This document shows, in pieces, positions 1,703-39,055 of a stretch of 64,000 bases of DNA. The translations under genes and the position numbers were made by a program. Where the stretch lies: the IMG/VR virus record IMGVR_UViG_3300043399_000297, positions 62,001 through 126,000 of that record. One strand, 5' to 3'. How positions within the stretch are numbered: position 1 is the first letter of the stretch; each line of letters opens with the position of its first letter. The notes under the pieces are model-generated. The model had not been told where the DNA came from. It worked only from the letters and a program-made list of their open reading frames with translations, and did not search any database.

Positions 1703-2647
1703 ATGGACGACATTATTGATATTGCAGACTTAGACGTAATATACCTAAGCTATGACGAACCTCAAAAAGAAGAATTCTGGCTCAAGATTAAGAATATGGT
1801 GCCTTGGGCTGTCAGAGTAGATGGTGTTAAGGGAAGTGACGCTGCACATAAAGCAGCAGGGGAAGCATCATCTACTGAGAGATTCATTCTCATTGACGGT
1901 GACAACTTGCCCGATGAGAACTTCTTTAATTTACAATTAGACTTTACCGATAAAGACCCTAACTACAAGTTAGCGCAGTATCGTTGGAGAGCAGTCAATG
2001 CTATCAACGGGCTACGTTATGGCAACGGCGGTATGTCGTCCTGGACAAAAACTTATGTTGCCAATATGAAGACCCACGAAAGTAGTGACGGTAGTGATGC
2101 CACGACGGTTGACTTTTGTATGGATTCTTCAGATAATCTATACTGGGCAATGCACGATTGCTACTCTACTACGTATCCAAACTACACTCCCTTCCAAGCG
2201 TGGAGAGCAGGATTCCGTGAAGGTGTCAAGATGGTGCTTGATCGGGGTGCAAGGCCCAGTATAGACGATTTCAAAGAGAGAGTTGCTGGCCGCAATTTAG
2301 ATAATCTTAAAGTTTGGTTTAATGTCGGCGCAGACGCAGAGAACGGCTACTGGGCCATATATGGCGCAAGGCTCGGAACGTATATGACTATGCTTACTGA
2401 CTGGGACTATTTAGAAGTAGCGGACTTTGATACATTTGTTAAATTGTGGGAAGACCATAGATATAATTATCCTGAACAAGAAATTGAACGTCTTGGCAGA
2501 GAATTAGATAATAAATTAGGTCTCCCCGTCTGCTTACTCAGCCCGGAACAATCAAAGTTCTTCAAGCATTTTTACAACGCTGACAAACACAATCAAGGAC
2601 CATTGGTCAAGGAGATGGATGTGATTCGCCGCCTAGAGGGATGGTGA
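1703..2647 (+). CDS. GT-A-fold glycosyltransferase-like protein
   Basis: DVIYLSYDE, RVDGVKGSDAAHKAA, LIDGD (DxD) and WRAGFREGVK; start moved to the ATG at 1703 after TAAATA. Confidence 0.6.
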   Translation: MDDIIDIADLDVIYLSYDEPQKEEFWLKIKNMVPWAVRVDGVKGSDAAHKAAGEASSTERFILIDGDNLPDENFFNLQLDFTDKDPNYKLAQYRWRAVNAINGLRYGNGGMSSWTKTYVANMKTHESSDGSDATTVDFCMDSSDNLYWAMHDCYSTTYPNYTPFQAWRAGFREGVKMVLDRGARPSIDDFKERVAGRNLDNLKVWFNVGADAENGYWAIYGARLGTYMTMLTDWDYLEVADFDTFVKLWEDHRYNYPEQEIERLGRELDNKLGLPVCLLSPEQSKFFKHFYNADKHNQGPLVKEMDVIRRLEGW

Positions 2648-3293: not shown

Positions 3294-3310
3294 TCTTAAA
3301 AGAGCAAAAA

Positions 3311-5931: not shown

Positions 5932-5934
5932 ATA

Positions 5935-8312: not shown

Positions 8313-8320
8313 ATATTCAA

Positions 8321-18855: not shown

Positions 18856-19439
18856 TGGAAAAGGTTGCAGAACTTGAAAAGTTAATTGCAGACTATTATA
18901 ATGCACCATATGCCGTAGCAGTTGATTGTTGTACTCACGCAATTGAATTGTGTTTGCGCACACGAAAGACATTACTTGTCACCTGCCCCAAGAACACATA
19001 TGTTAGTGTTCCTATGACATTCAAGAAATTAGGACTTAACTGGAAGTTTCAAGAAGAACGATGGAATGACTATTATCTGATTGGTGGAACGAACATTATT
19101 GATGCTGCCGTATATTGGAAAGAAAACGGATATCTTCCTGGATCTATGATGTGTCTCAGTTTTCAATTTAAGAAACATCTCAATTTGGGCAGAGGAGGAA
19201 TGATCTTACTCGACAACTACGATCAATATCTTACCTTAAAGAAGATGAGGTATGATGGCAGAATTGATGGCATACCTTGGGCTGAACAAGATATCGACAC
19301 AGTGGGTTATCATTATTATATGACGCCTGAAACTGCACAGCTTGGTATATCTCGTTTTTCTATTGCAAAGACTACTGAACCTAAGCAGTGGTCTTATCTA
19401 GATTATCCTGACCTATCTAAGATGAAGGTGTTCTCCTGA
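18855..19439 (+). CDS. DegT/DnrJ/EryC1/StrS PLP aminotransferase (short form)
   Basis: AVAVDCCTHAIEL, IIDAA, SFQFKKHL (PLP Lys), GRGGM, GYHY. Confidence 0.85.
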   Translation: MEKVAELEKLIADYYNAPYAVAVDCCTHAIELCLRTRKTLLVTCPKNTYVSVPMTFKKLGLNWKFQEERWNDYYLIGGTNIIDAAVYWKENGYLPGSMMCLSFQFKKHLNLGRGGMILLDNYDQYLTLKKMRYDGRIDGIPWAEQDIDTVGYHYYMTPETAQLGISRFSIAKTTEPKQWSYLDYPDLSKMKVFS

Positions 19440-21186: not shown

Positions 21187-22908
21187 ATGAAACAAGCAAA
21201 AGTTGAAGTTGGTCATATGGGTAGATATTGGAACGATGATTTCAAAACTTTGCCATATGTGAAACAGGGTGTAACTAAAGAAGAAGTCGAAAACTGGGAG
21301 CGGTTGGGATATTCTGAAAATTTTGTAAAAAGCTACACTGGATCAATGTATGATCACAGTAATGTGATGCCTGAATGGATAGATAGATTTGAAAATGCGT
21401 TTGGTTTATATAAGCAATCCTACACGTTTTACTGTATGCAAACTTGTGAAATTATGCCGACGCACAGTGATCACTTCTCTACCTATTGCAAAATAAATAA
21501 CACCACGCCTGATAAAGTCTATAGGGCAATACTGATGTTAGAAGATTGGAAACCCGGCCACTATTTTGAACTCGACGGTGTTGGATATGTTAACTGGAAG
21601 GCAGGAGACTGGTTCAAATGGAGAGGAGATGTTCCGCATGCCGCAAGCAACATAGGAATAGAGCCTAGGTATACGCTACAAGTTACTGGTCTTGATTTTA
21701 GAGTCGGTCAGTTAAACAGACTGTTTTCATTTAATATACCGGACGTTGAGGAGGAGGATAATCATCCCTTACTAAAAGATATATCTAATAAGATACAAGA
21801 GTCTCATTATATGGTGTATTTAAATAACGGATATATAACTGAGCTTGATTCTATTAACCACTCTCAGGATGTTCAAGAATTATTGAATAAAGAAGGATTG
21901 CATATCTATATGTATGAACCGCTGTGTAGTTATAGAATGCAGCAGGATAATCATACTCAAGGGTTTTATTCAGAATTTGATGATATATCACCTTATGATT
22001 TGCAAGCTGAAGAACTTGATAGCATATATGTTTATGTTAGAAGAAATAATTTGAACAATGTTACTGTTCATACAGGTGATTATAATGCAGGAGATTGGTA
22101 TAAAGATTACACTGATCGAATGAATTTGATATGTGACGATTTGTTTTTGAAAACACAAAAAACAATAGTTAACATACGGGAAACACCTAGTAATGAATTC
22201 ATTTATAATTTTATATGTTTAAACTGGCGCTTTACTAAACATAGACAATTAGTTGCTACTTATCTTGCTGGGCAGTCAGGACATTTGAGTTGGCATTTCA
22301 AATCAAAGTTTGATGTACTAGGAAAAGATTTGTTTTTTGATTTAGCCGAGTGGAAAGAGAAATATCCCACAATATATCAGAGGTTAGAACAAGGATGTGA
22401 CTATATTAGTCAGCATTCACCGTTATGCCTAGACAAAAGATCAAATCGTGCAATAGAAGTGTTAGATCCTAAATATGTAGAAATGTGGCCAGATTCAAAT
22501 GAATATGAACCAGGTGTCACGCCTTCACTGTACAATCAGGTATCCAATAACTTGTCCGATTATTATTTCCACGTGTTTTTGGATGTAGTAAACGAAACTC
22601 GGTTTGCACAACCGACTGCTAACATCAGTGAGAAGACTTTCCAGCCTATGCAATATTTTAAACCCTTTGTGCTAGTTGCCCCACCTAAGTCCCTTGAATA
22701 CGTCAAATCACTCGGTTTTAAAACCTTCAGTGATTTTTGGGATGAGAGCTATGATAACGAGTTTGATCACGGGGAGAGATTAGTTAAGATTTTTCAATTA
22801 TTAGATAAGTTGTTTGCAATGTCTAATCAAGAGCAACGTGACCTTTATAATAAGATGTTGCCTGTATTGCAACATAATTTTGACAGGTATAAGGATTTTG
22901 TGTTATGA
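21187..22908 (+). CDS. Cupin/2OG-Fe(II) oxygenase-like domain fused to a glycosyltransferase-like domain
   Basis: N-terminal PTHSD..DWKPGH..PHAASN..RYTLQVTG; C-terminal LNWRFTKHR..NET..SEKTFQP..KPF..LGFKTF..DESYD. Confidence 0.65.
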   Translation: MKQAKVEVGHMGRYWNDDFKTLPYVKQGVTKEEVENWERLGYSENFVKSYTGSMYDHSNVMPEWIDRFENAFGLYKQSYTFYCMQTCEIMPTHSDHFSTYCKINNTTPDKVYRAILMLEDWKPGHYFELDGVGYVNWKAGDWFKWRGDVPHAASNIGIEPRYTLQVTGLDFRVGQLNRLFSFNIPDVEEEDNHPLLKDISNKIQESHYMVYLNNGYITELDSINHSQDVQELLNKEGLHIYMYEPLCSYRMQQDNHTQGFYSEFDDISPYDLQAEELDSIYVYVRRNNLNNVTVHTGDYNAGDWYKDYTDRMNLICDDLFLKTQKTIVNIRETPSNEFIYNFICLNWRFTKHRQLVATYLAGQSGHLSWHFKSKFDVLGKDLFFDLAEWKEKYPTIYQRLEQGCDYISQHSPLCLDKRSNRAIEVLDPKYVEMWPDSNEYEPGVTPSLYNQVSNNLSDYYFHVFLDVVNETRFAQPTANISEKTFQPMQYFKPFVLVAPPKSLEYVKSLGFKTFSDFWDESYDNEFDHGERLVKIFQLLDKLFAMSNQEQRDLYNKMLPVLQHNFDRYKDFVL

Positions 22909-24478: not shown

Positions 24479-24566
24479 AAAAATTGTCAACAAGATTAAA
24501 CGAGAGATTACATACCGCAAGCGTGTCAAAGAACTACGCAAAAGAGATCCGTTCATTTACAAATGA
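24462..24566 (+). CDS. 34-aa basic peptide MFKFIKKIVNKIKREITYRKRVKELRKRDPFIYK (not in the ORF track)
   Basis: GGAG RBS upstream; the stop overlaps the carbamoyltransferase start (ATGA); fills the intergenic gap exactly. Confidence 0.75.
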   Translation: MFKFIKKIVNKIKREITYRKRVKELRKRDPFIYK

Positions 24567-26047
24567 GTTATCTAGGCATTAGCTGCGGCTTTCACGATGC
24601 TGCTGTCAGTGTAGTTGACAGTGTTGGCAATATCACCTTCGCCGGACATAGCGAACGTTATAGTAAGAAAAAACACGATGAAAACTTATCTGTTGATCTA
24701 GTCAAAGATGCACTAACGCATTCATATGGCTCTATGGAACTACACTATTATGAGAGACCATACATTAAGGCTATCAGGCAATGGCAAGCTGGACAAGATA
24801 TCGGGCCATTGAACGTTAAAGATATAATTGGCTCAGATGTATTAGATACTCTAAAAATGTATGATAGTAAGATTCATACACACAATCATCATCTTTGTCA
24901 CGCCGCAGCCGGCTTTCAAACAAGCCCATTCAATGATGCTACTGTAGTTGTCATTGATGCGATAGGGGAATTAGATACTATTAGTATTTGGCACGCCACT
25001 TATAATAAGAAAGGTAGAGCGAAGTATAAGAAGCTTTGGGGAAAGAAATATCCTAATTCAATAGGACTAATGTATTCAGCTATGACACAGAGAGTAGGTC
25101 TTAGACCATTAGACGAAGAATACATATTGATGGGTATGGCAGCATATGGCAAACCTAAATATTTTGATTTATTAAATGATACCTTTTTGTCTAATCCTGC
25201 GTATATTGATTTTAGGCAGAACTTGCATACAGGAGTAGATCAAAGTTTCTTGTCCGGTGCAGATGATATGGATATTGCTAGTTCTGCGCAAGCGTTGGCA
25301 GAAGTATTGATTCGAATTGTATTGTTAAAGGCGATGCATCTGGGAAGAAGTAGTAACCTAGTATATAGCGGAGGAGTAGCACTCAACTGTGCAGCCAATA
25401 GATATCTAGGAAGCTATTTCAAAAATATGTGGATTATGCCTAACCCAGGTGATGCAGGCAATAGTCTTGGTGCAGCAGCATTAGGGTACGGTAAGAAATT
25501 AAATTGGACTAATGCATTCTTGGGTTATGAAATCAAAGGCGATTATCCGGTTGACAATCTCATAAAAGAGTTGCATAGTAATAAGATCGTAGGAGTAGCT
25601 AGTGGTAGAGCAGAGTTCGGTCCAAGAGCATTGGGTAATCGTAGTCTGTTAGCAGACCCACGCGGCCCTAATATTAAGGATAAGGTTAATGAGATTAAGC
25701 GAAGACAAAAGTTCAGACCATTTGCGCCGATCGTTTTGGAGGAGTTGGTTACTGATTACTTTGATATGCCTACTGGTTGGACTGACTCTAGGTATATGCA
25801 AGTCGTCGCTATTTGTAGGCATCCTGGTTTATTTCCTGCTATCGTTCACGCTGACGGGACTAGTCGTGTTCAGACTGTTCCTAAAGATGAATCAGGAATC
25901 AGAAAGCTTTTAGAAGTTTGGTACGAACAGACCGGCTGCCCTATGCTTCTTAATACATCACTGAATATTCGCGGTGAACCCATGGTCAACGATAGAAATG
26001 ATGCTGACCGCTTTGAAAAACTCTATGGAGTAAAAGTATATTCATAA
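24563..26047 (+). CDS. O-carbamoyltransferase (NodU/CmcH/TobZ family)
   Basis: HDAA, ERYS, HHLCHA, MGMAAYG, GGVALN, PGDAG, EFGPRALGNRS, FRPFAP, NTSLN. Confidence 0.93.
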   Translation: MSYLGISCGFHDAAVSVVDSVGNITFAGHSERYSKKKHDENLSVDLVKDALTHSYGSMELHYYERPYIKAIRQWQAGQDIGPLNVKDIIGSDVLDTLKMYDSKIHTHNHHLCHAAAGFQTSPFNDATVVVIDAIGELDTISIWHATYNKKGRAKYKKLWGKKYPNSIGLMYSAMTQRVGLRPLDEEYILMGMAAYGKPKYFDLLNDTFLSNPAYIDFRQNLHTGVDQSFLSGADDMDIASSAQALAEVLIRIVLLKAMHLGRSSNLVYSGGVALNCAANRYLGSYFKNMWIMPNPGDAGNSLGAAALGYGKKLNWTNAFLGYEIKGDYPVDNLIKELHSNKIVGVASGRAEFGPRALGNRSLLADPRGPNIKDKVNEIKRRQKFRPFAPIVLEELVTDYFDMPTGWTDSRYMQVVAICRHPGLFPAIVHADGTSRVQTVPKDESGIRKLLEVWYEQTGCPMLLNTSLNIRGEPMVNDRNDADRFEKLYGVKVYS

Positions 26048-26056
26048 GTAGTTATT

Positions 26057-29000
26057 ATGCTACGTGATGTATTTTACTATGGACAGAAACCAAACGTTCA
26101 TCCGAGAGAACAGTTTGCTAAAGATTTAGAAGATGCTAGGAATAAAGCGACTACTCGTGACTTTTGGATAATCAACGAATTCTGCGATTATCGTAATTTT
26201 AATTGGGATTTCGATTTTGAGTTTCTCCCAGATGAAGATGTATGGGCAGAAGATCATAACAATGTATGGCCTAGCCAACATCAAAAAGATTCAGGAACCT
26301 GGTTATGCCCCAAACAGCATAGTGACTTAATTATATATCGGTGTGATGTTGATCCTATCTGGCGCAAGAACGAAAAGCAAAGTGTTAATTGGGTTGAATT
26401 AGATTTAATTGACCATACTAAGTTTGACTTTAGTTGGCATCCTGATCCTACTGATCCTCCTTATATCTATAAGTGGGGATGCAAATATTATCCTGCTCAA
26501 ATCAAGCACGTATTAGAATATCGTGTTCCGGGCTCAACTCAAGAAAAATTTATGGATATTTCTGCGGAACTTTTGCCTGACTGGGATAAATGGGTAATAC
26601 CTGACAGTATAAATAAATCCGGGTTTGATTTTTCTTGGAGACCCAGTCCTCTTGACCCGCCGCTTATATATGAATTTGGAACGCAATGGCAAAAGGATGG
26701 TGGACCGATTTATGTTGCTAGTGGAGCAACTAAAAGGAAGTATATCAATGATCAAAAAGCTACGAGGATTGCTTCAAACGAAAATTGGACGATTCCTGAC
26801 AATATTGATATTGCTGGATTTGATTTATCATGGCATCCAGATAATATTAGTCCTCCTTATATCTATGTATTTGCTACTCAGTGGGCACTCAGTGGCGGAC
26901 CTGTTTACACAGTTCCTGGCGCAACTGAAATCAAATATGTAGACGCTCAGGTAGCTACTGCACTCCCCGATAAAACAAATTGGATATACAACGAAGAAGA
27001 AATTGACGTTTCTAGTTTTGACTTCAGTTGGCATCCCTTTTCAGGGGACGACCCTTTCATCTATCAGTTTGGTACTCAATGGCAAAAGACTGGAGGTCCG
27101 AAATATATTACTCCGGGCGCGGATGAATCAAGCCCGATCAAGTATGTTGATACTCGTATTATCAAAGCTACTCACCTGCCTGACAAAAACAAGTTCATTG
27201 TATTGGGAAACAATGCTGTTCAGGAGTTTGATTATAGTTGGCATCCAGATGATACAGAAGATCCATATATCTATGTGTTTGGCAATCAATGGCATACAGC
27301 AGAAGTTATGCCAACCATTGAATACAGGATGACTGGCGCAACCCAATACAAGTATATAAATGATACTATTGCTATTCTTGGTCCTAATATGACACATTGG
27401 TTTTACGACTCAAACGAGATAGATGTTTCTGATTTTGATTTTAGTTGGTGTCCTAATCCCGGAGAACCTGAATTAATTTATGAGTTTGCTACTCAGTGGC
27501 AAAAGACTGGTGGTCCTAGATATATTGTGCCGGGTGCTACTGACGTAAAGTATTTAGACTTTCAAAAAGCAAGAGCATTGCCTTCTGAAAAAAATTGGAC
27601 AGTTCCTAGCAATATTGATGCAACGTTGTTTGACTTCAGTTGGCATCCTGATGCGACTAGCCCTCCTTATATCTATGTATTTGCTACTCAGTGGGCACTC
27701 AGTGGCGGACCTATATATACTGTACCGAACGCAACCGAATACAAATATGTCGATGAACAGATAGCTACTGCATTACCTGATATGACCAATTGGGTATATG
27801 ACGAAACAAAGATTGATGTTGAAAGTTTTGACTTCAGTTGGCATCCATATGTTGAAGATCAGCCATATATCTATCAGTTCGGTACACAATGGTGGCCAAC
27901 TGGTGGACCAAAATATATTGCACCGGGGGCAACAAGCGCAAGCCCAGTAAAATACATTGATACACGTATCATTAAAGCTAATACAATACCGGGTCTTGAA
28001 AATTGGGAAATTCCGGACGAGGTAGATAAAAGTAAGTTTGATTTTACTTGGATCCCTCATCCAGAAGACCCTCCCTATATATATGTGTTCGGCAATCAGT
28101 GGTTTAGTGCAGAAAAAATGCCCACTGTAAGATATATTGTTGAAGGTGCAACTGAAATTAAGTATGTTCGCGATATCATTGCTACAATAAAACCAAACAA
28201 AGACAATTGGACAATAGCTAATAATATAGTAGTGAAAGAGTTTGATTTTAGTTGGATACCAGATCCTCATTCTCCTCCTTATATCTATGTGTTCGGTAAT
28301 CAATGGTATTCAGCAGAAGAAATGTCAACTGTAGAATATCACACTCTTGGTGCTACTGAAAGAAAATATATTAATGATATTAGGGTTGTGTTAGACAAAA
28401 ACTTTACGAATTGGGAAATACCAAAAGGAATCGATGTTTCGCGATTTGATTTTAGTTGGATCCCTCATCCTAAAGCACCTCCATATATCTACCAGTTCGG
28501 CACCTTAAAGGATCCGTTGGATGGACCTAGATATATTACTCCAGGCAACAATGGAGAAATAGTTCGTGTACCAAGAATAGAACTTGATGAAATTGAATTT
28601 ATGCCTATCAATAGATATTATATTGAAACTACGTTGGATGACTTGATTATTAAACATCCAGATGAAATGTTCTGGGCGCTGAATAAAGAAATAGATTATT
28701 CTACATTTAACTTTGACTGGACCCCTTCATTGGACCAAGCAGATTATATTCAGGTATTCGGTCAAAGCTCAAGTATAAAAACTCAAACTTATTTGATCAA
28801 TTCTACATTGTGGACTAAAGGGTTGCGAGAGTTTAATTATGTAGAAGAACAAGAGAAAAAGACTGTTTCTGATTTGGATATCTTTTTTGTGGACAAAGGA
28901 AACTCAGAAGCTAATGAAAGATTCCATATACTAAAAAACAAGTTCGGCTCAAAGATTCAAAAGACACGATATCTCAACAGTTGGGTAGACACAATTAATC

Positions 29001-30604
29001 GCTGTATTAATCGTGCTACAAGTAATCTAATTTGGATTCTTAACAGCGAATTAGATTATTCTAACTTTGACTTTACTTATTACCCTAACCCTTGGCAGAT
29101 GAAGATGGTTCACGTATTTGGAACACAACATAGTCATTGGGGAACAACTTTTATGGTCAATCGCGAAACGTTTCCCGAAGATACAAAGTATATTAAAATC
29201 ATTGAACATTTGTCAAATCTAAACTTTGTCAAGGACATTAGAGCCAAAGCAACTGAATGTGTATATGATATTGTCATTATAGACCACAATAATATAGAAA
29301 GCTTATCAGTTACAGAAACGATGAAAAGAGTTTGGGCTCCTAATAGGAATGTTACTACTATAAAATATGAGGATAGTTATCTAAACACAATTCGTAACTA
29401 TGTAAAGAAGTTACCTGACAAAAAAGAACATTATCTTTGGATTTGCTCAAGCGTATGCGACTATACTAACTTTGACTTTAGTTATATATGTGATCCCTTT
29501 GCTAAAGATAATCTACACGTATTTCCCAGCAATAATCAAAAGTTTGGGGACACGTTCTTGTTGGATGTAAACAAGACTAAAGAAATCATAGATGATCTAG
29601 AAAAACTTGAAGATTATAATAAGGTGAGCTATAACAGTGCTACGAAGGCGAATAGATTGTTGCCACCAATCATCGTCACAGAAAATGATACGCATACCAA
29701 TTCATTAGAAACTATTACAGGATTTCCTTATGCAAGACTGATTACTAAGGACAACTTGAATGTTGAAGTTCCTGAGATTGAACCTATGAATCTATGGTCA
29801 CCTGAAACTAAGAACATTCAGGTACTAAGCACCGGTGCAACTCATATTGTAGCTCCTATAGAAATTAAAGATTATGTCAAGAAAGAACTATACGAATATC
29901 CATATATTAAACGCGCTCCAAAGTTAGCATTGTCTAATCCTATTGATATCGTGTTCTTGAGCAACGGTGAAATTGGTGCAGAAGAAAACTATGAACATCT
30001 ATTGAATATCACTAAGAACTTGAAGAACCGTGTAGTGAGAGTAGATGGGGTGAACGGTCGTGTTGCAGCATATCATAAAGCAGCAGAAGCTAGCGAAACG
30101 CCGTGGTTCTTCACGGTGTTTGCTAAGTTGAAGGTTAGTCCCAAATTTGATTTTAACTGGCAACCTGACAGAATGCAAATCCCCAAGCACTACATCTTCC
30201 ACGCAAAGAATCCTGTCAATGGGTTGACATATGGTCACCAGGCAATGATTGCATACAACAAAAAGCTTACTCTTGCTAATGAGGGATATGGACTAGACTT
30301 TACATTAGATGACGAACACGAGGTTGTGCCACTTATCTCTGGTACCGCACATTATAATACAGATGAATTTTCTACTTGGAGAACAGCATTTAGAGAGGTA
30401 ATCAAGCTTAAAGCAGACATTAGTGATATAGCCAAAGATAGACTTGATGTATGGTTGAATAAAGCAGAAGGTGACTTTGCTCAATATAGCATTAAGGGTG
30501 CATTGGATGCTGATGAATATTATGATGAAGTCAATGGCGAGTTTGACAAACTCAAGCTAAGCTATGAATGGGATTGGCTACGCAAAAAGTTTGGGGAAAT
30601 GTGA
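26057..30604 (+). CDS. 1515-aa protein with tandem FDFSWxP/PYIY repeats and degenerate GT-A-like domains
   Basis: 11 internal repeats of about 65 aa; C-terminal domain homologous to ORF 1703 (DIVFLS, RVDGVNG, WRTAFREVIK). Confidence 0.75.
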   Translation: MLRDVFYYGQKPNVHPREQFAKDLEDARNKATTRDFWIINEFCDYRNFNWDFDFEFLPDEDVWAEDHNNVWPSQHQKDSGTWLCPKQHSDLIIYRCDVDPIWRKNEKQSVNWVELDLIDHTKFDFSWHPDPTDPPYIYKWGCKYYPAQIKHVLEYRVPGSTQEKFMDISAELLPDWDKWVIPDSINKSGFDFSWRPSPLDPPLIYEFGTQWQKDGGPIYVASGATKRKYINDQKATRIASNENWTIPDNIDIAGFDLSWHPDNISPPYIYVFATQWALSGGPVYTVPGATEIKYVDAQVATALPDKTNWIYNEEEIDVSSFDFSWHPFSGDDPFIYQFGTQWQKTGGPKYITPGADESSPIKYVDTRIIKATHLPDKNKFIVLGNNAVQEFDYSWHPDDTEDPYIYVFGNQWHTAEVMPTIEYRMTGATQYKYINDTIAILGPNMTHWFYDSNEIDVSDFDFSWCPNPGEPELIYEFATQWQKTGGPRYIVPGATDVKYLDFQKARALPSEKNWTVPSNIDATLFDFSWHPDATSPPYIYVFATQWALSGGPIYTVPNATEYKYVDEQIATALPDMTNWVYDETKIDVESFDFSWHPYVEDQPYIYQFGTQWWPTGGPKYIAPGATSASPVKYIDTRIIKANTIPGLENWEIPDEVDKSKFDFTWIPHPEDPPYIYVFGNQWFSAEKMPTVRYIVEGATEIKYVRDIIATIKPNKDNWTIANNIVVKEFDFSWIPDPHSPPYIYVFGNQWYSAEEMSTVEYHTLGATERKYINDIRVVLDKNFTNWEIPKGIDVSRFDFSWIPHPKAPPYIYQFGTLKDPLDGPRYITPGNNGEIVRVPRIELDEIEFMPINRYYIETTLDDLIIKHPDEMFWALNKEIDYSTFNFDWTPSLDQADYIQVFGQSSSIKTQTYLINSTLWTKGLREFNYVEEQEKKTVSDLDIFFVDKGNSEANERFHILKNKFGSKIQKTRYLNSWVDTINRCINRATSNLIWILNSELDYSNFDFTYYPNPWQMKMVHVFGTQHSHWGTTFMVNRETFPEDTKYIKIIEHLSNLNFVKDIRAKATECVYDIVIIDHNNIESLSVTETMKRVWAPNRNVTTIKYEDSYLNTIRNYVKKLPDKKEHYLWICSSVCDYTNFDFSYICDPFAKDNLHVFPSNNQKFGDTFLLDVNKTKEIIDDLEKLEDYNKVSYNSATKANRLLPPIIVTENDTHTNSLETITGFPYARLITKDNLNVEVPEIEPMNLWSPETKNIQVLSTGATHIVAPIEIKDYVKKELYEYPYIKRAPKLALSNPIDIVFLSNGEIGAEENYEHLLNITKNLKNRVVRVDGVNGRVAAYHKAAEASETPWFFTVFAKLKVSPKFDFNWQPDRMQIPKHYIFHAKNPVNGLTYGHQAMIAYNKKLTLANEGYGLDFTLDDEHEVVPLISGTAHYNTDEFSTWRTAFREVIKLKADISDIAKDRLDVWLNKAEGDFAQYSIKGALDADEYYDEVNGEFDKLKLSYEWDWLRKKFGEM
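26385..28560 (+). repeat. Coding tandem repeat array (11 units of about 200 bp) with an 810-bp higher-order duplication
   Basis: Unit is NW...ID...FDFSWxP...PYIYxFGxQW...Y..PGAT..KY; 51 bp are identical at 26852-26902 and 27662-27712. Confidence 0.85.
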
Positions 30605-31470: not shown

Positions 31471-33999
31471 ATGGACATTTCAGAACTCGCCAATTTCAAT
31501 TTAAGTGATGCAGTATCTTTTCACGAGGAACTAAACCCACAGCTTTGGGAAGACCACAAATTAGACAGAGAAGTTCGTGATCAGTTATTGTTGATTGCAG
31601 AAGACTTTGTAGAATATCTTGGTATTGGTACACTTAAAGTAAAAGATGTTACTATCAGTGGTAGTAACGCTGCATATTCATATACTCCCCACAGTGATTT
31701 AGATTTGCATATCATAGTAGATTTTAATGATCTACCTAACGATCCAGTGTACCAAGAACTATTCACTGCTAAAAAAACAATATATAATGAAATGCACGAT
31801 ATAACGGTTCATAGTGTTCCTGTAGAATTATATGTGCAAGATATTAATCAACCTGTGCAGTCATTGGGTGAATATAGTATTGTTCACAACAAGTGGATTC
31901 GTATTCCTAAAAAGCGTAGAGCTAACTTTGACGAAGTTGCTACTAAAGCCAAATATGATAAACTAGCTGACTTGATTGAACTTACATTGAAGTCAAAAGA
32001 CTATAATAAAGTGAAAAATACACTTGATTTGCTCAAGCGTTATCGTAAAGCTGGGTTGGAAAAAGAAGGTGAGTTTGGTCCTGAAAATCTCGCATACAAG
32101 GCTCTTAGGAAGCAAGGTGCTGTAAAAGATTTGTTTGATCTTAAAGCTAGGCTTCACGCTGAACGGTTGAGTATTGAAGAAGATTCAAAATTACTTGACA
32201 AGCCGGAAATGACTATAGCACAGTTAGCAGAGAAGCACGGTGTATCTCGTATGGAAATTGCAACGCAGTTGGACAAAGGCATTAAGGTTGAACTTGAACA
32301 CACTAGTCATAAAAATGTAGCTCGTGAGATTGCATTAGACCATATTGCTGAGGATCCAAAATACTATGATAAATTATCTAAGGCTGAGTTGGAAGAAGAG
32401 ATTGTAGATGAAACCGCAGAAGAAAATCAAATAATTAGCTTGATAGCTAAACACGCGGCTGATAATATCGTAGACATAATGCAAGTTAAAGAAAATGCAT
32501 TTTTATCATTTATACAAGCAGGTATGACTCCCAAACACAATCTTACAGTGTTTGGTGTCAAAATCAAAGATTTAGGTATTCCTAAAGTCAAGGATCCCAC
32601 ATTAGCAAAATTGTTAAAAACTATGGAAATCAAGGTTAAAACTTCTAAAAATTGGGAAAATGATGAGGGTATAAAAACGCACGGTAGTTATTATCCCGGA
32701 GAAAATTATATTGAACTTTATTTTCCGGCTCACGAGTTCACTGCTAAAAAAAGAGATTCATCATTGCAAGTAGAAATAGCAGACACACTTGCTCACGAAA
32801 TACAACACGCATTGGATGACTTTAAAAGTAAAGGAAACGCATTTAAAGATTTAGCATCTTATTCAGGTGGTAAAGATTATGAATCATACTTAAAACTTCC
32901 ATATGAAGTAAATGCTAGATTCCAGCAAGCAACTATGGATATAGCAAAGTATATAGCTACACCGAAAAAAGATGGATCAAGAACTACACAAAAAGATTTG
33001 CCCGAATTGATTAGATATGCGTTTGAGAAAAATCAATTAAACAATATATATAGAAAGAACCAAGCAGAATATAAGCGATTACTCACTAGAGCATATAAAT
33101 TTTTTCAAGCAGAATTAAATGCTCCCAAGAAAGCAACGCCTCAGAATATAGTAAGTAGGGCAGTCAATTGGATATTAGGAAAGCCTACTACACAGGTTAA
33201 GGAAGCATCAGGATATATCCCCAGAAAAAAAGAAAATAACTATTTAGGCTGGGAATTCACAAAACCAAAACCTGATTATTGGATGATGCAAGAAGCGGTT
33301 GAAGAATATTACAAGAAAGATGGTAAATGGTTTCCCCACAGAACACACGGAATTCATCAATTGGTCACTAGACAGGAATTACGTGAATCTATGCAAGATG
33401 AAGTCAAAGAATTCTGGAACCAAATGATTCGTTTAGACGGTCGTAAAGAAGTAAAATTAAAGCCCGGTAGTTCAGTTAGTGTCATACAATGTTGGTCTCA
33501 TCCTTATGATTCTATATTTGAGTTGAGGGGCAACTTAAACCCTAAAAAAATAGCAGATGTATATTATGAGGATGGAGGATCAATCAGTTATATACAATTT
33601 GAAGACGGATCAACATTCCCGGACAAATCATTTCTAGACCGAGGACAAGGCGGAGAATTGGATGGTATCATAACTACTTTCTTTCCGTCTAAGCAAGCAG
33701 CCGAACATATGTTGACTGCTTTACGGTTAGTTGTTCCTGCTGGATGGAAATTAAGCACCGCTAACTTAAACGAATCTTCGTTGAATGAAGCCTCGGGATA
33801 TATTCCAAGTAAAAAAGAAAAGAACGACCCTCGCTTCAAGACTGCCCTCACTGTAGATGTAAAGCCAGACAGCATCAAAAAGAATGCTAATGCGTTCAAC
33901 TGGAAAACATCGCGGGCCGGCATTCCTCCCCAGGCTAGATCAGATGGCAAACTAGCAGAAGATTTGATGAAAGAGTTTAAAAACTTTTTGGGTAAGTAA
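31471..33999 (+). CDS. Modular protein: Pol-beta-type nucleotidyltransferase, small helical domain, HExxH zincin-like domain and unknown modules
   Basis: ISGSNAAYSYTPHSDLDLH..VELYVQD; GIKVELEHT..IALDHIAEDPKYYDKL; LAHEIQHALD..EVNARF; duplicated EASGYIP. Confidence 0.7.
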   Translation: MDISELANFNLSDAVSFHEELNPQLWEDHKLDREVRDQLLLIAEDFVEYLGIGTLKVKDVTISGSNAAYSYTPHSDLDLHIIVDFNDLPNDPVYQELFTAKKTIYNEMHDITVHSVPVELYVQDINQPVQSLGEYSIVHNKWIRIPKKRRANFDEVATKAKYDKLADLIELTLKSKDYNKVKNTLDLLKRYRKAGLEKEGEFGPENLAYKALRKQGAVKDLFDLKARLHAERLSIEEDSKLLDKPEMTIAQLAEKHGVSRMEIATQLDKGIKVELEHTSHKNVAREIALDHIAEDPKYYDKLSKAELEEEIVDETAEENQIISLIAKHAADNIVDIMQVKENAFLSFIQAGMTPKHNLTVFGVKIKDLGIPKVKDPTLAKLLKTMEIKVKTSKNWENDEGIKTHGSYYPGENYIELYFPAHEFTAKKRDSSLQVEIADTLAHEIQHALDDFKSKGNAFKDLASYSGGKDYESYLKLPYEVNARFQQATMDIAKYIATPKKDGSRTTQKDLPELIRYAFEKNQLNNIYRKNQAEYKRLLTRAYKFFQAELNAPKKATPQNIVSRAVNWILGKPTTQVKEASGYIPRKKENNYLGWEFTKPKPDYWMMQEAVEEYYKKDGKWFPHRTHGIHQLVTRQELRESMQDEVKEFWNQMIRLDGRKEVKLKPGSSVSVIQCWSHPYDSIFELRGNLNPKKIADVYYEDGGSISYIQFEDGSTFPDKSFLDRGQGGELDGIITTFFPSKQAAEHMLTALRLVVPAGWKLSTANLNESSLNEASGYIPSKKEKNDPRFKTALTVDVKPDSIKKNANAFNWKTSRAGIPPQARSDGKLAEDLMKEFKNFLGK

Positions 34000-34579: not shown

Positions 34580-34660
34580 CTAACATCAAGATAGCGTATA
34601 ACGAGACTATAGAGAGCAAGAAAGTAAATCTCTCTACTAACTTAAACTAGGAGCTAATTT

Positions 34661-35761
34661 ATGTCTCAAATGTCTGATACCCTCACTGTTACTTCGATCC
34701 AGGCGCGCAAGGCTATTCTTGCTGCTTTCAAGGCAAAGCGTCCTGTCTTCCTCTGGGGCCCTCCGGGCATCGGTAAGTCGGAAGTCGTTCAGGAAATTAC
34801 TGAGGAACTCGGTGGTTATATGGTCGATCTGCGTATGGCGCAGATGGAACCCACTGATATTCGTGGTATCCCCTACTACAACAAGGACCTCGGCAAGATG
34901 GATTGGGCCGAGCCCGTCGATCTTCCCAGCGCAGAACTTGCTGCTGAATACCCCATCGTTGTTCTCTTCCTTGACGAAATGAACTCTGCTCCCCCGGCTG
35001 TTCAGGCTGCTGGTTATCAGCTTATTCTGAACCGTCGTGTTGGTAAGTATAAGCTGCCCGATAATGTTGTTATCGTTGCTGCTGGTAACCGTGACAGCGA
35101 CAAGGGCGTTACTTATCGTATGCCGATGCCGCTTGCTAATCGTTTCGTTCACCTTGAAATGCGTCCCGACTTCAATGCTTGGCAGCAGTGGGCTGTTCAC
35201 AAGGCTGTTCACAAGGACATTGTTGGTTATCTCTCGTTCGCTAAGCAGGATATGTATGACTTTGATGCAAAGTCTTCTTCTCGTGCTTTTGCTACCCCGC
35301 GTTCGTGGGTGTTCGTGAGCGACCTGCTCGTTGACGAGGACAATGTTGACAACGATACACTGTTCAATCTTGTTGCAGGTTCTGTCGGTGACGGTCTTGC
35401 TACTAAGTTTATGGCACATCGTCGTGTTGCTGGTCAGATGCCTGAGCCGATCGACATTCTCGACGGTAAGGTAAAGGACCTCAAGGTCAAGGAAATCTCT
35501 GCGATGTACTCGCTCACGATTTCTATGTGCTACGAACTCAAGGACGCACTTGATAACAAGCGTGTTGACAACAAGCAGTTCCACGTGATGGCTGACAATT
35601 TCTTCGAATACATCATGAAGAACTTCGAAACTGAACTGGTTGTGATGGGTGCGAAGATTGCGCTCAAGACTTATCGTCTGCCGATTGAGCCCTCGCAGCT
35701 TTCTAATTTTGACGAGTTCCACAAGAAGTACAGTAAGTATATCGTGGAAGCTGGCAACTAA
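34661..35761 (+). CDS. MoxR-type AAA+ ATPase
   Basis: GPPGIGKS, LFLDEMN, AAGN, LANRF, TPRSW. Confidence 0.9.
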   Translation: MSQMSDTLTVTSIQARKAILAAFKAKRPVFLWGPPGIGKSEVVQEITEELGGYMVDLRMAQMEPTDIRGIPYYNKDLGKMDWAEPVDLPSAELAAEYPIVVLFLDEMNSAPPAVQAAGYQLILNRRVGKYKLPDNVVIVAAGNRDSDKGVTYRMPMPLANRFVHLEMRPDFNAWQQWAVHKAVHKDIVGYLSFAKQDMYDFDAKSSSRAFATPRSWVFVSDLLVDEDNVDNDTLFNLVAGSVGDGLATKFMAHRRVAGQMPEPIDILDGKVKDLKVKEISAMYSLTISMCYELKDALDNKRVDNKQFHVMADNFFEYIMKNFETELVVMGAKIALKTYRLPIEPSQLSNFDEFHKKYSKYIVEAGN

Positions 35762-35774
35762 GCTAGCGGCTCCT

Positions 35775-35809
35775 GGGGAGAGGTTCGAGACAGCCTCTCC
35801 CCTTTTTTT
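35775..35809 (+). terminator. Rho-independent terminator
   Basis: GGGGAGAGGT..GCCTCTCCCC followed by T7. Confidence 0.85.
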
Positions 35810-35812
35810 CGG

Positions 35813-35841
35813 TTGACATTCCCTTCAAGGTTTGTTATATT
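35813..35841 (+). promoter_or_regulatory. Early sigma70 promoter
   Basis: CGGTTGACA-17-TATATT. Confidence 0.75.
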
Positions 35842-35866
35842 GTCTCTATAAAGCAAGGAGATTTTT

Positions 35867-37177
35867 ATGAGTCAAGTTATTCCCGGTACTGCGACTAAGC
35901 CCAAGAAGGGTAAGCGCACTCGCAGCCAAAAGTTTGAAAATCTGATCGGTCCGACTGATCCTAAGATTGACCACGAAGCTCGTGAACGTCTGATCACTGC
36001 TCGTATTGGTCTCCTTCTTCGTCATAGCTTTTTCGGCAACCTCGCTACTCGTCTCCAGCTTGTAAATGCTGACGAGTGGTGCTCCACTGCTGCTACTGAC
36101 GGTCTTCGTTTTTATTACAACAGTCGTTTTATCAAGATGCTTAAGACTAAGGAGGTTGAATTCCTCGTTGGTCACGAAGTGCTTCACGTAGTCTACGATC
36201 ACCTTGGTCGTCGTGACAGTCGTGATCCTGAAATCTGGAACATCGCTAACGACTATGCTGTTAACGCTGACCTTAAGCGTCACAAGGTCGGTGAAATGAT
36301 CACTACTGTTCCTGCTCTCTTTGAGCCTAAGTATGATGGTAAGGCTTCTGAGGAAATCTATGATGACCTTATGAAGAATGTCAAGTATATTGACATTGAT
36401 GAACTCCTTGACAAGATGCTTGACGATCACCTTGAAGACGAGGGTCAGGGTATGGGTGATGAAGACGGTGATGAAAATGGTCAGAAGGGTAATGGCAAGC
36501 GTCCTAAGATGAGTCCTGAGGAGCGTGAGCGCGCCCGTCAGGAGATGAAGCAGGCTATCATCAATGCTGCACAGAGTGCCGAAGCTGGTTCTATCCCGGC
36601 TGGCGTTCAGCGTATGATCAAGCAGCTTACTGATCCTGTTATGCCCTGGCGTGAACTGATCCAGACGAACCTTACTTCGTCTATCAAGAGCGATTACACT
36701 TGGATGCGTCCTTCTCGTCGTTCTTGGCATATGGATGCTGTTATGCCCGGTATGAACCCGGGTGAAGAAATCGATGTTGATATCTATATCGATATGTCGG
36801 GTTCTATCTCTAACAAGCAGGGTATGGCATTTCTTTCGGAAGTCGCCGGTATGATGGAAGCGTTCGATGGTTATTCGCTTCGTGTCACTTGCTTTGATAC
36901 TCGCTGCTATAACACACAGGAGTATACTAGCGAGAATATGGAGAATATCGAGGAGTATGAGCTTGCAGGTGGCGGCGGTACTGACTTCGACTGCATCTTT
37001 GACGACCTTAAGGAAGCAGGACGTGTCCCGGTTCGCTTGATCGTATTCACTGACGGTTATCCTTGCGGTAGCTGGGGTGATGAGGATTACTGTGATACGA
37101 CTTGGATCATTCACGGTGATCCCAATCCGAACCCGCCCTTCGGTACGTATGCTATCTATGACGACCACAGAAAGTAA
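35867..37177 (+). CDS. Metallopeptidase-like plus VWA domain protein (DUF2201-type), partner of MoxR
   Basis: TAATDG, HEVLH, WNIANDYAVN, DMSGS (MIDAS), GGGGTDF, FTDG. Confidence 0.88.
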   Translation: MSQVIPGTATKPKKGKRTRSQKFENLIGPTDPKIDHEARERLITARIGLLLRHSFFGNLATRLQLVNADEWCSTAATDGLRFYYNSRFIKMLKTKEVEFLVGHEVLHVVYDHLGRRDSRDPEIWNIANDYAVNADLKRHKVGEMITTVPALFEPKYDGKASEEIYDDLMKNVKYIDIDELLDKMLDDHLEDEGQGMGDEDGDENGQKGNGKRPKMSPEERERARQEMKQAIINAAQSAEAGSIPAGVQRMIKQLTDPVMPWRELIQTNLTSSIKSDYTWMRPSRRSWHMDAVMPGMNPGEEIDVDIYIDMSGSISNKQGMAFLSEVAGMMEAFDGYSLRVTCFDTRCYNTQEYTSENMENIEEYELAGGGGTDFDCIFDDLKEAGRVPVRLIVFTDGYPCGSWGDEDYCDTTWIIHGDPNPNPPFGTYAIYDDHRK

Positions 37178-38758: not shown

Positions 38759-39055
38759 ATGTCCCCTGAGTTTTTTGAAAAATGGGAAAAGTTACTGGAA
38801 GGTGTTGATAAACAAAAGATACCTATTGAGTTTATTAAAAAGCTTGTTATAAGATTGCGCGGCAAACGCCAACAAACTATTAACATTGAAAAGTTAATCA
38901 AGCAAGGACTGGACCCCGACGAAATAGAAGAAGTGATATCCGGAAGACTAATAGAATTAGATGAATTAGTTTTGGGTATTGAATTTATTCTAAATGTAGA
39001 AACAATTGCTGACATTGTTCAGCCAGAAACAGATAGATTATTGAATAAGTTATGA
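38759..39055 (+). CDS. Hypothetical protein
   Basis: 98-aa ORF coupled to DHFR. Confidence 0.65.
   Translation: MSPEFFEKWEKLLEGVDKQKIPIEFIKKLVIRLRGKRQQTINIEKLIKQGLDPDEIEEVISGRLIELDELVLGIEFILNVETIADIVQPETDRLLNKL

What the first reader, a model, noticed from the sequence alone, without database searches (positions are those of the whole stretch)
26057..30604. Giant protein built from an amplified fragment of a GT-A-like domain
Seen: 11 repeats of about 65 aa in an ABCD-ABCD-like order (810-bp period, 51 bp identical). The same W....D...F(D/N)F.(W/Y).P......VF motif recurs in the N-terminal domain and four C-terminal domains. The last domain is homologous to ORF 1703 but has FTVFAK where 1703 has ILIDGD. 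Inference: a scaffold of catalytically degenerate GT modules whose repeat number expands by recombination. It could act as an enzyme-assembly platform, a glycan-binding array or a chain-length ruler.
Basis: partly seen in the sequence, partly recalled or inferred. Interest (0 to 1): 0.65.

Follow-up and report, generated by a model that had tools for sequence, protein, structure and literature searches.

The report
Phage giant protein of glycosyltransferase-derived repeats
A 1515-residue protein of an uncultured freshwater jumbo phage is built almost wholly from copies and half-copies of one sugar-transferase (GT-A) domain, with a rod of 11 half-domain repeats whose number runs from 1 to 33 in relatives, and it belongs to a large, undescribed family that probably organises or measures a phage-made glycan rather than being a tail fibre.

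Summary
ORF 26057-30604 encodes 1515 aa with 11 tandem repeats of about 66 aa. It has an 810-nt (4-unit) super-repeat and a 51-nt exact duplicate. The W-motif recurs in the N-terminal domain and in four C-terminal domains.

AlphaFold2 models (pLDDT 85) show that the last two C-terminal domains, D3 and D4, are GT-A-like. Profile comparisons and structure matches show that each repeat corresponds to the part of a GT-A-like domain from the DxD strand onward.

The last domain, D4, is homologous to ORF 1703-2647 and its family (E 3.6e-32). That family keeps DxD in 144 of 150 representative domain hits. D4 always has F-A-K there and has lost the other conserved donor-site acids, so it is a pseudo-glycosyltransferase. 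D2 keeps an invariant N-S-E-L-D and may still be active.

The family has more than 1500 clusters, all called hypothetical and nearly all from uncultured phages. Repeat number changes even between proteins with identical C-termini, while the copies are under purifying selection.

The gene sits 9 nt after a carbamoyltransferase, in an island of sugar-tailoring and radical-SAM enzymes. The function (scaffold, ruler or glycan binder) is inferred, not shown. It is not a conventional tail fibre.

The parts
26057..30604 (+). Whole gene, 1515 aa (P0001). It belongs to a family of more than 1500 90%-identity clusters, all labelled hypothetical.
   Evidence: No Pfam, PHROG, NCBIfam or PDB sequence match.
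26057..26380 (+). N-terminal mini alpha/beta domain (aa 1-108). It consists of beta-alpha-beta plus a loose copy of the W-motif. Mean identity across the family is 77%, but the model confidence is low.
   Evidence: D3 HMM hits aa 20-101 with E 8e-4.
26381..28579 (+). Array of 11 tandem repeats of about 66 aa (aa 109-841). It is all-beta with pLDDT 93-97. Each unit corresponds to the DxD strand, the W-motif loop and the following strands of a GT-A-like domain.
26582..27388 (+). Super-repeat copy 1 (repeats R2-R5, aa 176-444).
27392..28198 (+). Super-repeat copy 2 (repeats R6-R9, aa 446-714), 810 nt downstream of copy 1. dN/dS between the two copies is 0.08-0.30.
26852..26902 (+). 51-nt stretch identical to 27662-27712, probably a gene-conversion tract.
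27662..27712 (+). Second copy of the 51-nt identical stretch.
28601..28876 (+). D1 (aa 849-940): a reduced GT-A-like module of beta-alpha-beta, W-motif and strands. It is the least conserved domain (46%).
28871..29257 (+). D2 (aa 939-1067): a compact alpha/beta domain, 77% conserved. It has an invariant N-S-E-L-D (aa 996-1000, nt 29042-29056) where DxD would lie.
29258..29689 (+). D3 (aa 1068-1211): a GT-A-like / nucleotidyl-transferase-like fold, 57% conserved, with no acidic pair.
   Evidence: (Z 9.6-9.8 to MobA, IspD and cytidylyltransferases)
29690..29932 (+). Beta-rich linker (aa 1212-1292) leading into D4.
29933..30379 (+). D4 (aa 1293-1441): a GT-A fold, 79% conserved. F-A-K (aa 1355-1357, nt 30119-30127) replaces DxD.
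30380..30601 (+). C-terminal helical bundle (aa 1442-1515), shared with the ORF 1703 family.
1703..2647 (+). ORF 1703 (314 aa): a stand-alone paralogue of D4 with intact D-G-D and the other family-conserved acids. It is a candidate active partner of D4.
24563..26047 (+). NodU/CmcH-type carbamoyltransferase. It ends 9 nt before the giant gene and lies directly upstream in 56 of 63 related loci.

Best explanation
The gene encodes a soluble, mostly non-catalytic protein made by repeated duplication of one GT-A (nucleotide-sugar transferase) domain. It works inside the phage's island for making and tailoring unusual sugars.

Shown:
- The C-terminal block holds three and a half GT-A-like domains.
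- The last domain (D4) descends from a DxD-bearing glycosyltransferase family. It has lost every conserved donor-site acid, but it keeps the second half of the domain (usually the acceptor side in GT-A enzymes, from general knowledge) and the helical C-terminus.
- The 11 repeats are copies of the GT-A segment that starts at the DxD strand. They lack the nucleotide-binding half, so they cannot bind a donor.
- The two ends are strongly conserved, while the number of repeats varies from 1 to 33 and turns over quickly by unequal recombination.

Inferred:
- The repeats form a stiff beta rod whose length sets the distance between the conserved N-terminal domain and the C-terminal block.
- The rod and pseudo-enzyme D4 hold a glycan, or the enzymes that build it.
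- The active chemistry comes from D2, if its N-S-E-L-D still binds a metal, and/or from the intact paralogue ORF 1703 and the neighbouring carbamoyltransferase.

In short, it is a variable-length scaffold or ruler for glycan assembly, not an ordinary multi-enzyme and not a tail fibre.
For: Fold: the C-terminal model has pLDDT 85.4. Its best PDB matches are multi-GT-A proteins: LH3 at E 1e-7, mimivirus R699, K4CP, heparosan synthase 2, LARGE1 and CHSY3-CHPF. D4 has Z 10-12 to B4GALNT1, WrtF, SpsA and STIV A197, and D3 has Z 9.6-9.8.

Repeats as a GT-A fragment: hhalign gives E 3e-14 and 1.4e-8 to D1 and D2. HMM cross-hits agree. Single repeats superpose on the second half of GT-A enzymes (Z 3-3.6, 60-65 residues, rmsd 2.3-2.8). 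About 9 of the 11 rows that match a repeat are GT-A-fold proteins, and they include D4's own best matches.

D4 degeneracy: the ORF 1703 family has 1191 50%-identity clusters. It keeps DGD or DAD in 144 of 150 representative domain hits. Among 50 scanned members, 16 carry GT-B-type glycosyltransferase domains (presumed fusions in the longer, ~740-aa proteins) and 3 hit PF00535. The family aligns to D4 at E 3.6e-32, and D4 replaces Y-D-E, G-x-D and D-x-D and lacks the T-H-E segment. F-A-K is invariant in 53 homologues and in a 42%-identical one.

Constraint: identity across the family is N-terminus 77%, D2 77%, D4 79%, against D1 46% and D3 57%. dN/dS between repeat copies is 0.08-0.30.

Repeat dynamics.

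Context: the carbamoyltransferase is adjacent in 56 of 63 loci. The island holds nucleotide-sugar dehydrogenase, 4,6-dehydratase/epimerase, DegT aminotransferases, methyltransferases and B12/radical-SAM enzymes, including a KedN5-type C-methyltransferase. No canonical GT family was found in the window's ORFs that I scanned. The only weak Pfam GT hits in the genome lie about 90 kb beyond the window's end.
Against: - No direct evidence of binding, of a glycan product, or of the protein's location.
- D2 may be catalytic. The protein would then be an enzyme with a long appendage rather than a scaffold.
- The rod-like geometry is inferred from secondary structure, high pLDDT, pTM 0.66 and non-significant matches to rod-like multi-domain proteins. 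The model's coordinates could not be inspected.
- Fast copy-number change with conserved ends is also typical of surface stalks and adhesins, which would fit a virion-borne role.
- Structural genes begin only about 13 kb downstream.
Confidence: 0.45

Rival explanations
1. It is an active multi-domain glycosyltransferase or polymerase, like K4CP, heparosan synthase or LARGE1. D2, and perhaps D3 or a metal-independent D4 that uses Lys1357, add sugars. The repeat array holds the growing chain for processivity.
For: The best fold matches are two-domain polymerising GT-A enzymes. D2 and D4 are the most conserved parts. D2 keeps an invariant N-S-E-L-D. No canonical GT is present in the ORFs scanned across the 30-kb sugar island. 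From general knowledge, metal-independent GT-A enzymes exist that use basic residues instead of DxD.
Against: D4 has lost not only DxD but also the other family-conserved acids and the T-H-E segment. D3 has no acidic pair, and D1 and the N-terminal domain lack half of the nucleotide-binding fold. The 607-aa homologue L080 lacks D1 and the first half of D2 but keeps D3 and D4, so D2's nucleotide-binding half is dispensable there.
Confidence: 0.25
2. It is a virion-associated fibre or decoration. The conserved N-terminus anchors it to the particle, the repeats form a stalk of strain-specific length, and the pseudo-GT domains act as lectins for host surface glycans. Alternatively, the protein is itself the carrier that the island's enzymes glycosylate.
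For: Conserved ends with a hypervariable number of beta modules resemble stalks of adhesins and phage decoration proteins. The repeat model's nearest, non-significant, matches are cadherin, S-layer and Ig-like rods. Baseplate-like and head genes follow within 13-16 kb.
Against: There is no PHROG or Pfam structural hit. The C-terminus is the most conserved part, unlike receptor-binding proteins. The monomer folds with high confidence, which does not suggest an intertwined trimer. The gene is probably co-transcribed with a carbamoyltransferase inside a biosynthetic block: the gap is 9 nt and no terminator was found.
Confidence: 0.2
3. The repeat array is a selectively neutral or selfish expansion with no function of its own. 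Only the N-terminal and C-terminal domains matter.
For: Copy number varies from 1 to 33 with no obvious optimum, and a 607-aa form with a single repeat exists.
Against: The frame is intact in every family member examined. dN/dS between copies is 0.08-0.30. Module pLDDT is 93-97. A period-4 order is conserved across the family.
Confidence: 0.07

Closest known systems
LH3/PLOD3 and mimivirus R699/L230-type collagen glycosyltransferases (a catalytic GT-A domain plus a non-catalytic accessory GT-A-like domain)
   Same: Tandem GT-A-like domains, one of which lacks DxD and is non-catalytic. These are the best Foldseek matches of the C-terminal block (6te3 at E 1e-7, 9dyt at 2.6e-6). A Megavirus homologue ranks 4th in BFVD. 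The accessory-domain concept is described in PMC6082870 and PMC12279948, which I listed but did not read in full.
   Different: About 8% identity and no sequence-level relation. There is no lysyl-hydroxylase domain. This protein has four modules plus an array of half-domains, which LH3 lacks.
Bifunctional GT-A polymerases (E. coli K4CP, Pasteurella heparosan synthase 2, LARGE1) and the CHSY3-CHPF enzyme/pseudo-enzyme pair
   Same: Several GT-A domains in one chain or complex, and for CHSY3-CHPF a pairing with an inactive paralogue that is my recollection, not a tool result. They are listed among the top fold matches.
   Different: Their domains keep DxD and are active. They have no tandem half-domain array and no copy-number variation.
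ORF 1703-type phage GT-A family (unnamed; includes Ralstonia phage RsoM2USA gp348)
   Same: D4 plus the C-terminal helices are true homologues (hhalign E 3.6e-32; 29-30% identity).
   Different: The family keeps Y-D-E, G-x-D, D-x-D and T-H-E, and D4 has lost all of them. The family lacks the F-D-F-x-W-x-P motif that marks the giant protein's modules.
Multi-glycosyltransferase proteins of giant viruses and phages in BFVD (for example the CeV 'multiple glycosyltransferase domain' protein and uncultured Caudovirales GT-A proteins)
   Same: Virus-encoded chains of several GT-A domains.
   Different: TM is only 0.13-0.19, so similarity is at domain level. No repeat array was reported for them here. 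Two real homologues (A0A6J5LK21 and A0A6J5L5L5, 38-39% identity, TM 0.82-0.85) are uncharacterised.
Molecular rulers of glycan length (WbdD coiled coil of E. coli O9a) and variable-repeat stalks of adhesins
   Same: This is a functional analogy only: conserved ends separated by a spacer of variable length.
   Different: The folds are unrelated. The analogy rests on my own knowledge and was not tested.

Membership tests
GT-A fold (nucleotide-diphospho-sugar transferase superfamily) | Alpha/beta/alpha sandwich with a central mixed sheet that superposes on solved GT-A enzymes | tested here: met
   D4 has Z 10-12 (rmsd 2.8-3.3, 132-143 residues) to B4GALNT1, WrtF, SpsA and A197. D3 has Z 9.6-9.8 to MobA, IspD and cytidylyltransferases. 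D1, D2 and the N-terminal domain are linked by HMM only.
GT-A fold (catalytically competent, metal-dependent) | DxD (or ExD) motif at the end of the fourth strand | tested here: not met
   D4 has F-A-K, invariant in 53 homologues. D3 has S-S-V-C-D. The repeats have only I-D and lack the nucleotide-binding half. D2 has N-S-E-L-D, which is inconclusive.
Pfam Glycos_transf_2 (PF00535) and other curated GT families | Score above the gathering threshold | tested here: not met
   No Pfam hit for the protein at E up to 1 apart from one sub-threshold LAG1-DNAbind row (E 0.042). No NCBIfam or PHROG hit either.
ORF 1703-type phage GT-A family | Sequence homology over the whole domain | tested here: met
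   hhalign probability 99.9%, E 3.6e-32, 214 columns. D4 HMM hits ORF 1703 at 1e-10.
ORF 1703-type phage GT-A family | The family's nearly invariant acidic residues (Y-D-E, G-x-D, D-x-D, T-H-E) | tested here: not met
   In D4 these are replaced by N-G-E, G-R-V and F-A-K, and the T-H-E segment is missing. The family keeps DxD in 144 of 150 representative domain hits.
Phage tail fibre / receptor-binding protein | Match to structural families, a variable C-terminal tip, and location in the tail module | tested here: not met
   No PHROG or Pfam structural match. The C-terminus is the most conserved part. The gene lies in a sugar-biosynthesis block.
Phage tail fibre / receptor-binding protein | Presence in virions, trimeric state | not testable with these tools
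   There is no proteome or cultured relative. The only match in cultured phages is a stand-alone GT-A.
Pseudo-enzyme scaffold paired with an active paralogue (CHPF-like) | Physical complex between the degenerate domain and an active GT | not tested

The most novel reading that the evidence does not exclude
The array of half-GT-A modules is a virus-encoded molecular ruler. Each module, or each four-module turn, holds one unit of a growing, heavily tailored glycan. The number of repeats, reset often by unequal recombination, would then fix the length of the glycan that the phage makes. This would be a heritable and fast-evolving way to vary a surface or shield polymer between phage strains.
Probability: 0.12. 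Interest if true: 0.85.

Novelty: new variant of a known kind. Interest (0 to 1): 0.62.

Why it matters
Proteins with several GT-A domains, some of them inactive, are known. A tandem array built from the second half of a GT-A domain alone, varying from 1 to 33 copies between close relatives, is not in Pfam, PHROGs, NCBIfam or the PDB.

The family is large (1574 clusters at 90% identity) and common in uncultured aquatic jumbo phages. It sits with sugar-tailoring radical-SAM, aminotransferase and carbamoyltransferase genes.

If the array binds glycans or sets their length, it would be a new kind of carbohydrate-binding module. It would also show how phages diversify a glycan.

The work also defines a very abundant, unnamed phage glycosyltransferase family (ORF 1703 type) and a clear natural enzyme/pseudo-enzyme pair for experiments.

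Tried and rejected
- Family scans of the whole protein and of its parts (Pfam, PHROGs, NCBIfam) gave nothing.
- PDB sequence search gave nothing.
- megablast and tblastn against 50,697 phage records gave only a stand-alone GT-A of Ralstonia phage RsoM2USA, annotated hypothetical among hypothetical neighbours.
- The word search with D4 alone returned only fragments of the same giant family on short contigs.
- Foldseek (PDB) and the ESM Atlas shape search with the repeat model found nothing outside the protein's own family.
- The language-model atlas gave only weak leads: GT2 at 0.86 and CgtA at 0.82.
- The scan of 185,579 species genomes found one MAG contig only.
- Sequencing runs: only the source freshwater sample holds the gene, and no RNA run does. 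The contig 'joints' in the repeat region have short sides (under 30-35 nt) at 90% likeness, so I do not count them as evidence of copy-number variants.
- The promoter and terminator scan was no better than shuffles.
- DNA hypermodification as the island's purpose finds no support from the nearby nucleotide genes. The thymidylate synthase is a genuine ThyA next to a DHFR, not a hydroxymethylase.
- The 'moraphage' jumbo-phage paper (PMC12619734) concerns another lineage.
No verdict follows from that.
- Conventional tail fibre: rejected for the reasons given under Membership tests.

Full report
**Setting**

The window is bases 62001-126000 of a 244,022-bp IMG/VR virus record from a freshwater metagenome. 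CheckV estimates it as 71% complete.

The record carries a T4-type large terminase that is 50% identical to those of the jumbo phages PA5oct and Atu_ph07. It also carries an SSB, structural proteins, ThyA and DHFR. All genes around the finding lie on the + strand.

**The observation**

ORF 26057-30604 is open and encodes 1515 aa.

- A regular-expression scan and a repeat HMM find 11 tandem units of 59-71 aa at aa 109-841.
- The consensus reads roughly: N-W, a short strand, I-D, F-D-F-S-W-x-P, P-x-I-Y-x-F-G-x-Q-W, G-G-P-x-Y, G-A-T, K-Y.
- Units R2-R5 and R6-R9 correspond pairwise, with R3/R7 at 75% and R4/R8 at 68% identity.
- This equals an 810-nt shift at which the DNA is 64% identical, against 25-37% at other shifts. 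It includes an exact 51-nt duplicate, 26852-26902 = 27662-27712.
- In public contigs of the source sample, the 51-mer forms its own unitig at twice the flanking depth. The 819-nt stretch between the copies is at single depth. The assembly's two copies, and hence 11 repeats, are therefore sound.
- The same motif sits at aa 884, 1004, 1139 and 1364, and more loosely at aa 47-57.
- The last domain aligns to ORF 1565/1703-2647 at 29% identity (E 7e-14), with F-T-V-F-A-K opposite I-L-I-D-G-D.

**Fold of the C-terminal block**

I aligned the region homologous to aa 842-1515 from 52 IMG/VR loci with the window's sequence and folded it. Mean pLDDT is 85.4 and pTM 0.71.

- The secondary structure is beta-alpha-beta throughout, ending in a helical bundle.
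- Foldseek's best PDB matches are proteins with two or more GT-A domains: LH3 (E 1e-7), mimivirus R699, chondroitin polymerase K4CP, heparosan synthase 2, LARGE1 and CHSY3-CHPF.
- VIA-align places aa 1295-1435 (D4) on B4GALNT1, WrtF, SpsA and STIV A197 at Z 10-12.
- It places aa 1068-1204 (D3) on MobA, IspD and cytidylyltransferases at Z 9.6-9.8.
- HMMs link the domains to one another: D1 to D2 at 1.6e-14, D2 to D3 at 1.5e-12, D4 to D2 at 1.6e-3.
- No other ORF of the 244-kb record is hit except ORF 1703, at 1e-10 with the D4 model.

**Fold of the repeats**

A model of aa 1-445 built from 46 sequences gives pLDDT 93-97 for the repeats. They are all beta. The N-terminal 108 aa reach only 42-75, and pTM is 0.66. 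Foldseek finds nothing significant in the PDB. The ESM Atlas shape search finds only the protein's own family. Two independent lines tie the repeat to the GT-A-like domains.

1. A profile of 400 repeat units aligns to D1 (probability 98%, E 3e-14, 49 columns) and to D2 (95.5%, 1.4e-8, 55 columns).
   - It aligns more weakly to D4 (E 9e-6 over 20 columns) and to D3 (2e-3).
   - It does not align to the linker or the C-terminal helices.
   - The aligned part runs from the strand that would carry DxD, through the W-motif loop, into the following hairpin.
2. In an exhaustive VIA search, each single repeat superposes on the second half of GT-A-fold proteins.
   - 60-65 residues align at rmsd 2.3-2.8.
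   - The matches are B4GALNT1, CesA1, Chs1, STIV A197, the Leptospira GT 6p61, MurU, LARGE1 and UDP-glucose pyrophosphorylase.
   - Each Z (3-3.6) is weak alone. However, about 9 of the 11 rows that match a repeat share this fold, and they include D4's own best matches.

The N-terminal 50 residues match generic Rossmann-like beta-alpha-beta units. It follows that the repeats lack the nucleotide-binding half.

**Is it catalytically degenerate?**

The stand-alone paralogue ORF 1703 (314 aa) has more than 8000 close relatives at 81-95% identity, all called hypothetical.

- Its wider family has 1191 clusters at 50% identity.
- In the best 150 representatives, the position of I-D-G-D reads DGD or DAD in 144 domain hits.
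- Of 50 members scanned, 16 carry GT-B-type glycosyltransferase domains and 3 reach PF00535. The GT-B matches are presumably fusions in the longer, ~740-aa proteins; I did not tabulate which members matched. This is a genuine glycosyltransferase family.
- Its profile aligns to D4 plus the C-terminal helices at E 3.6e-32 over 214 columns.

In that alignment D4 replaces Y-D-E by N-G-E, G-x-D by G-R-V and D-x-D by F-A-K, and it lacks the T-H-E segment. It keeps N-G-L-x-Y-G, D-F, W-R-x-x-F-R-E-x-x-K-L and the helices.

F-A-K is invariant in all 53 aligned homologues. It is also present in a 42%-identical 607-aa homologue. The only relative in cultured phages, RsoM2USA gp348, has D-G-D. D4 is therefore a pseudo-glycosyltransferase at the donor site. 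It is nevertheless the most conserved domain of the protein, at 79% mean identity.

D2 is equally conserved (77%). It has an invariant N-S-E-L-D where the weak alignment to the ORF 1703 family places D-x-D. I cannot call D2 dead. D1 (46%) and D3 (57%) are less constrained and lack an acidic pair.

**The family and its repeat dynamics**

The word search found 1574 clusters, none with a name. The listed ones are 1470-2641 aa long, and 2641 is close to the search's upper length limit.

- Full-length genes in IMG/VR loci range from 841 aa with 1 repeat (L062) to 3071 aa with 33 repeats (L050).
- The N-terminal 108 aa and the C-terminal 675 aa or so are collinear in all of them.
- Copy number changes faster than sequence. 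One pair with identical C-terminal 600 aa has 19 vs 18 repeats. Pairs at 97% and 91% identity have 24 vs 17 and 21 vs 33. At 90-97% identity only a quarter of pairs have equal numbers.
- A lag of four units gives the highest inter-unit identity in 77 of 139 proteins.
- Between the window's two super-repeat copies, dN/dS is 0.08-0.30. dS is lowest around the 51-nt identical tract, as expected for gene conversion on a background of purifying selection.

BFVD holds two uncharacterised homologues from uncultured Caudovirales phages, at 38-39% identity and TM 0.82-0.85.

Among 185,579 species genomes, only one contig matches: a 148-kb contig of a MAG labelled Haliscomenobacter. It encodes a 607-aa form with the N-terminal domain, one repeat, D3 and D4. 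A carbamoyltransferase, a radical-SAM gene and a DegT aminotransferase lie nearby.

**Context**

A NodU/CmcH-type carbamoyltransferase ends 9 nt before the start codon. No terminator-like site lies between the two genes. It occupies the same position in 56 of 63 related loci.

The 30 kb upstream encode the following:
- six radical-SAM proteins, of which two are B12-binding and one of those is of the KedN5 C-methyltransferase type;
- a nucleotide-sugar dehydrogenase;
- a DegT fragment;
- several conserved genes of unknown function.

Downstream lie a 4,6-dehydratase/epimerase, a DegT aminotransferase and methyltransferases.

No curated GT family hits any ORF that I scanned in the window. The record's only weak GT1 and GT2 hits lie at 213-227 kb of the genome. 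The giant protein and ORF 1703 are therefore the only glycosyltransferase-like genes found near this sugar island.

**Explanation**

Shown:
- The protein is a concatenation of one GT-A-like module in full, reduced and half forms.
- Its last domain has lost the donor site.
- The half-modules cannot bind a nucleotide sugar.
- The ends are constrained and the middle varies in length.
- The gene is embedded in, and probably co-transcribed with, sugar-tailoring genes.

Inferred:
- The array is a rod that spaces the N-terminal domain from the C-terminal block.
- The half-modules and D4 bind a glycan or partner enzymes.
- The chemistry is supplied by D2, ORF 1703 or the neighbours.

I put 0.45 on this scaffold/ruler reading. 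The rivals are an active polymerase with a processivity arm (0.25), a virion-borne stalk with lectin-like or glycosylated modules (0.2), and a functionless expansion (0.07).

I tried one complex prediction, D4 with ORF 1703, chosen by analogy with enzyme/pseudo-enzyme pairs such as CHSY3-CHPF.

**Comparison and novelty**

The closest known architectures are listed below.
- LH3 and R699, which have a GT-A domain plus a non-catalytic accessory GT-A-like domain.
- The bifunctional GT-A polymerases.
- The multi-GT proteins of giant viruses.

The resemblance to these is at fold level only, at about 8-10% identity.

The protein meets the fold test for GT-A. It fails the DxD test in D4 and D3, and it matches no curated family.

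I did not find the following described anywhere:
- the tandem array of second-half GT-A modules;
- its copy-number range of 1 to 33;
- the F-D-F-x-W-x-P signature.

I rate the finding as a new variant of a known kind, with interest 0.62.

**Limits**

- The model coordinates could not be inspected, so the shape of the rod is an inference.
- The alignments are shallow in diversity (44-73% identity to the window's sequence).
- No RNA or proteome data exist for this phage.
- The host is unknown. The Bacteroidota label of one MAG contig is only a hint.

Noticed in passing
Its wider family has 1191 50%-identity clusters. Among 50 scanned family members, 16 carry GT-B-type glycosyltransferase domains, presumably as fusions in the longer, ~740-aa proteins. 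No Pfam, PHROG or NCBIfam model covers it. It looks like a core enzyme of this phage group.
   Followed up: partly
window 3257-10243 and 16591-18855 (+): Six radical-SAM genes lie within 16 kb. Two are B12-binding, and one of those is of the KedN5 C-methyltransferase type. In the two paralogues at 4687-5931 and 5935-7212, the SPASM domain lies N-terminal to the radical-SAM core, the reverse of the usual order.
   Followed up: no
window 18855-19439 (+): A 194-aa ORF matches only positions 163-235 of the 360-position DegT/DnrJ/EryC1 aminotransferase profile. It is either a truncated or split aminotransferase, or a remnant.
   Followed up: no
window 34637-37177, both strands: Two pairs of near-full-length mirror ORFs lie on opposite strands: 34661-35761(+) with 34637-35722(-), and 35867-37177(+) with 35846-37168(-). 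The segment has 44-46% G+C against about 37% around it. The + strand ORFs match phage ATPase phrog_1297 and phrog_1314. The antisense ORFs are probably composition artefacts. The higher G+C may mark acquired DNA.
   Followed up: no
L080 (NZ_JBBAKG010000003.1, MAG labelled Haliscomenobacter), 7911-9734: A 607-aa minimal homologue (N-terminal domain, one repeat, D3, D4 with F-A-K) lies on a 148-kb contig with a carbamoyltransferase, a radical-SAM gene and a DegT gene. The contig is either a phage contig binned with a Bacteroidota MAG or a prophage. It is a possible host clue.
   Followed up: partly
window 31471-33999 (+): An 842-aa protein lies downstream, carrying a DUF5661 domain and a phrog_36119 N-terminus. 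It is conserved about 2 kb after the giant gene in 33 related loci. Its function is unknown.
   Followed up: no
window 21187-22908 (+): A 573-aa ORF with no family match is conserved upstream of the giant gene in 49 related loci at about 42% identity. After the carbamoyltransferase, it is the second most constant neighbour.
   Followed up: no
window 39052-40418 (+): A DHFR and a genuine ThyA (above the NCBIfam cut-off) overlap by 16 nt. They point to ordinary thymidylate synthesis, not a hydroxymethyl-pyrimidine pathway.
   Followed up: partly
G000 genome 213-227 kb (outside the window; L081-L083): Weak, sub-threshold GT1 and GT2 matches occur in three ORFs. They suggest a second glycan-related cluster elsewhere in the phage genome.
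   Followed up: no
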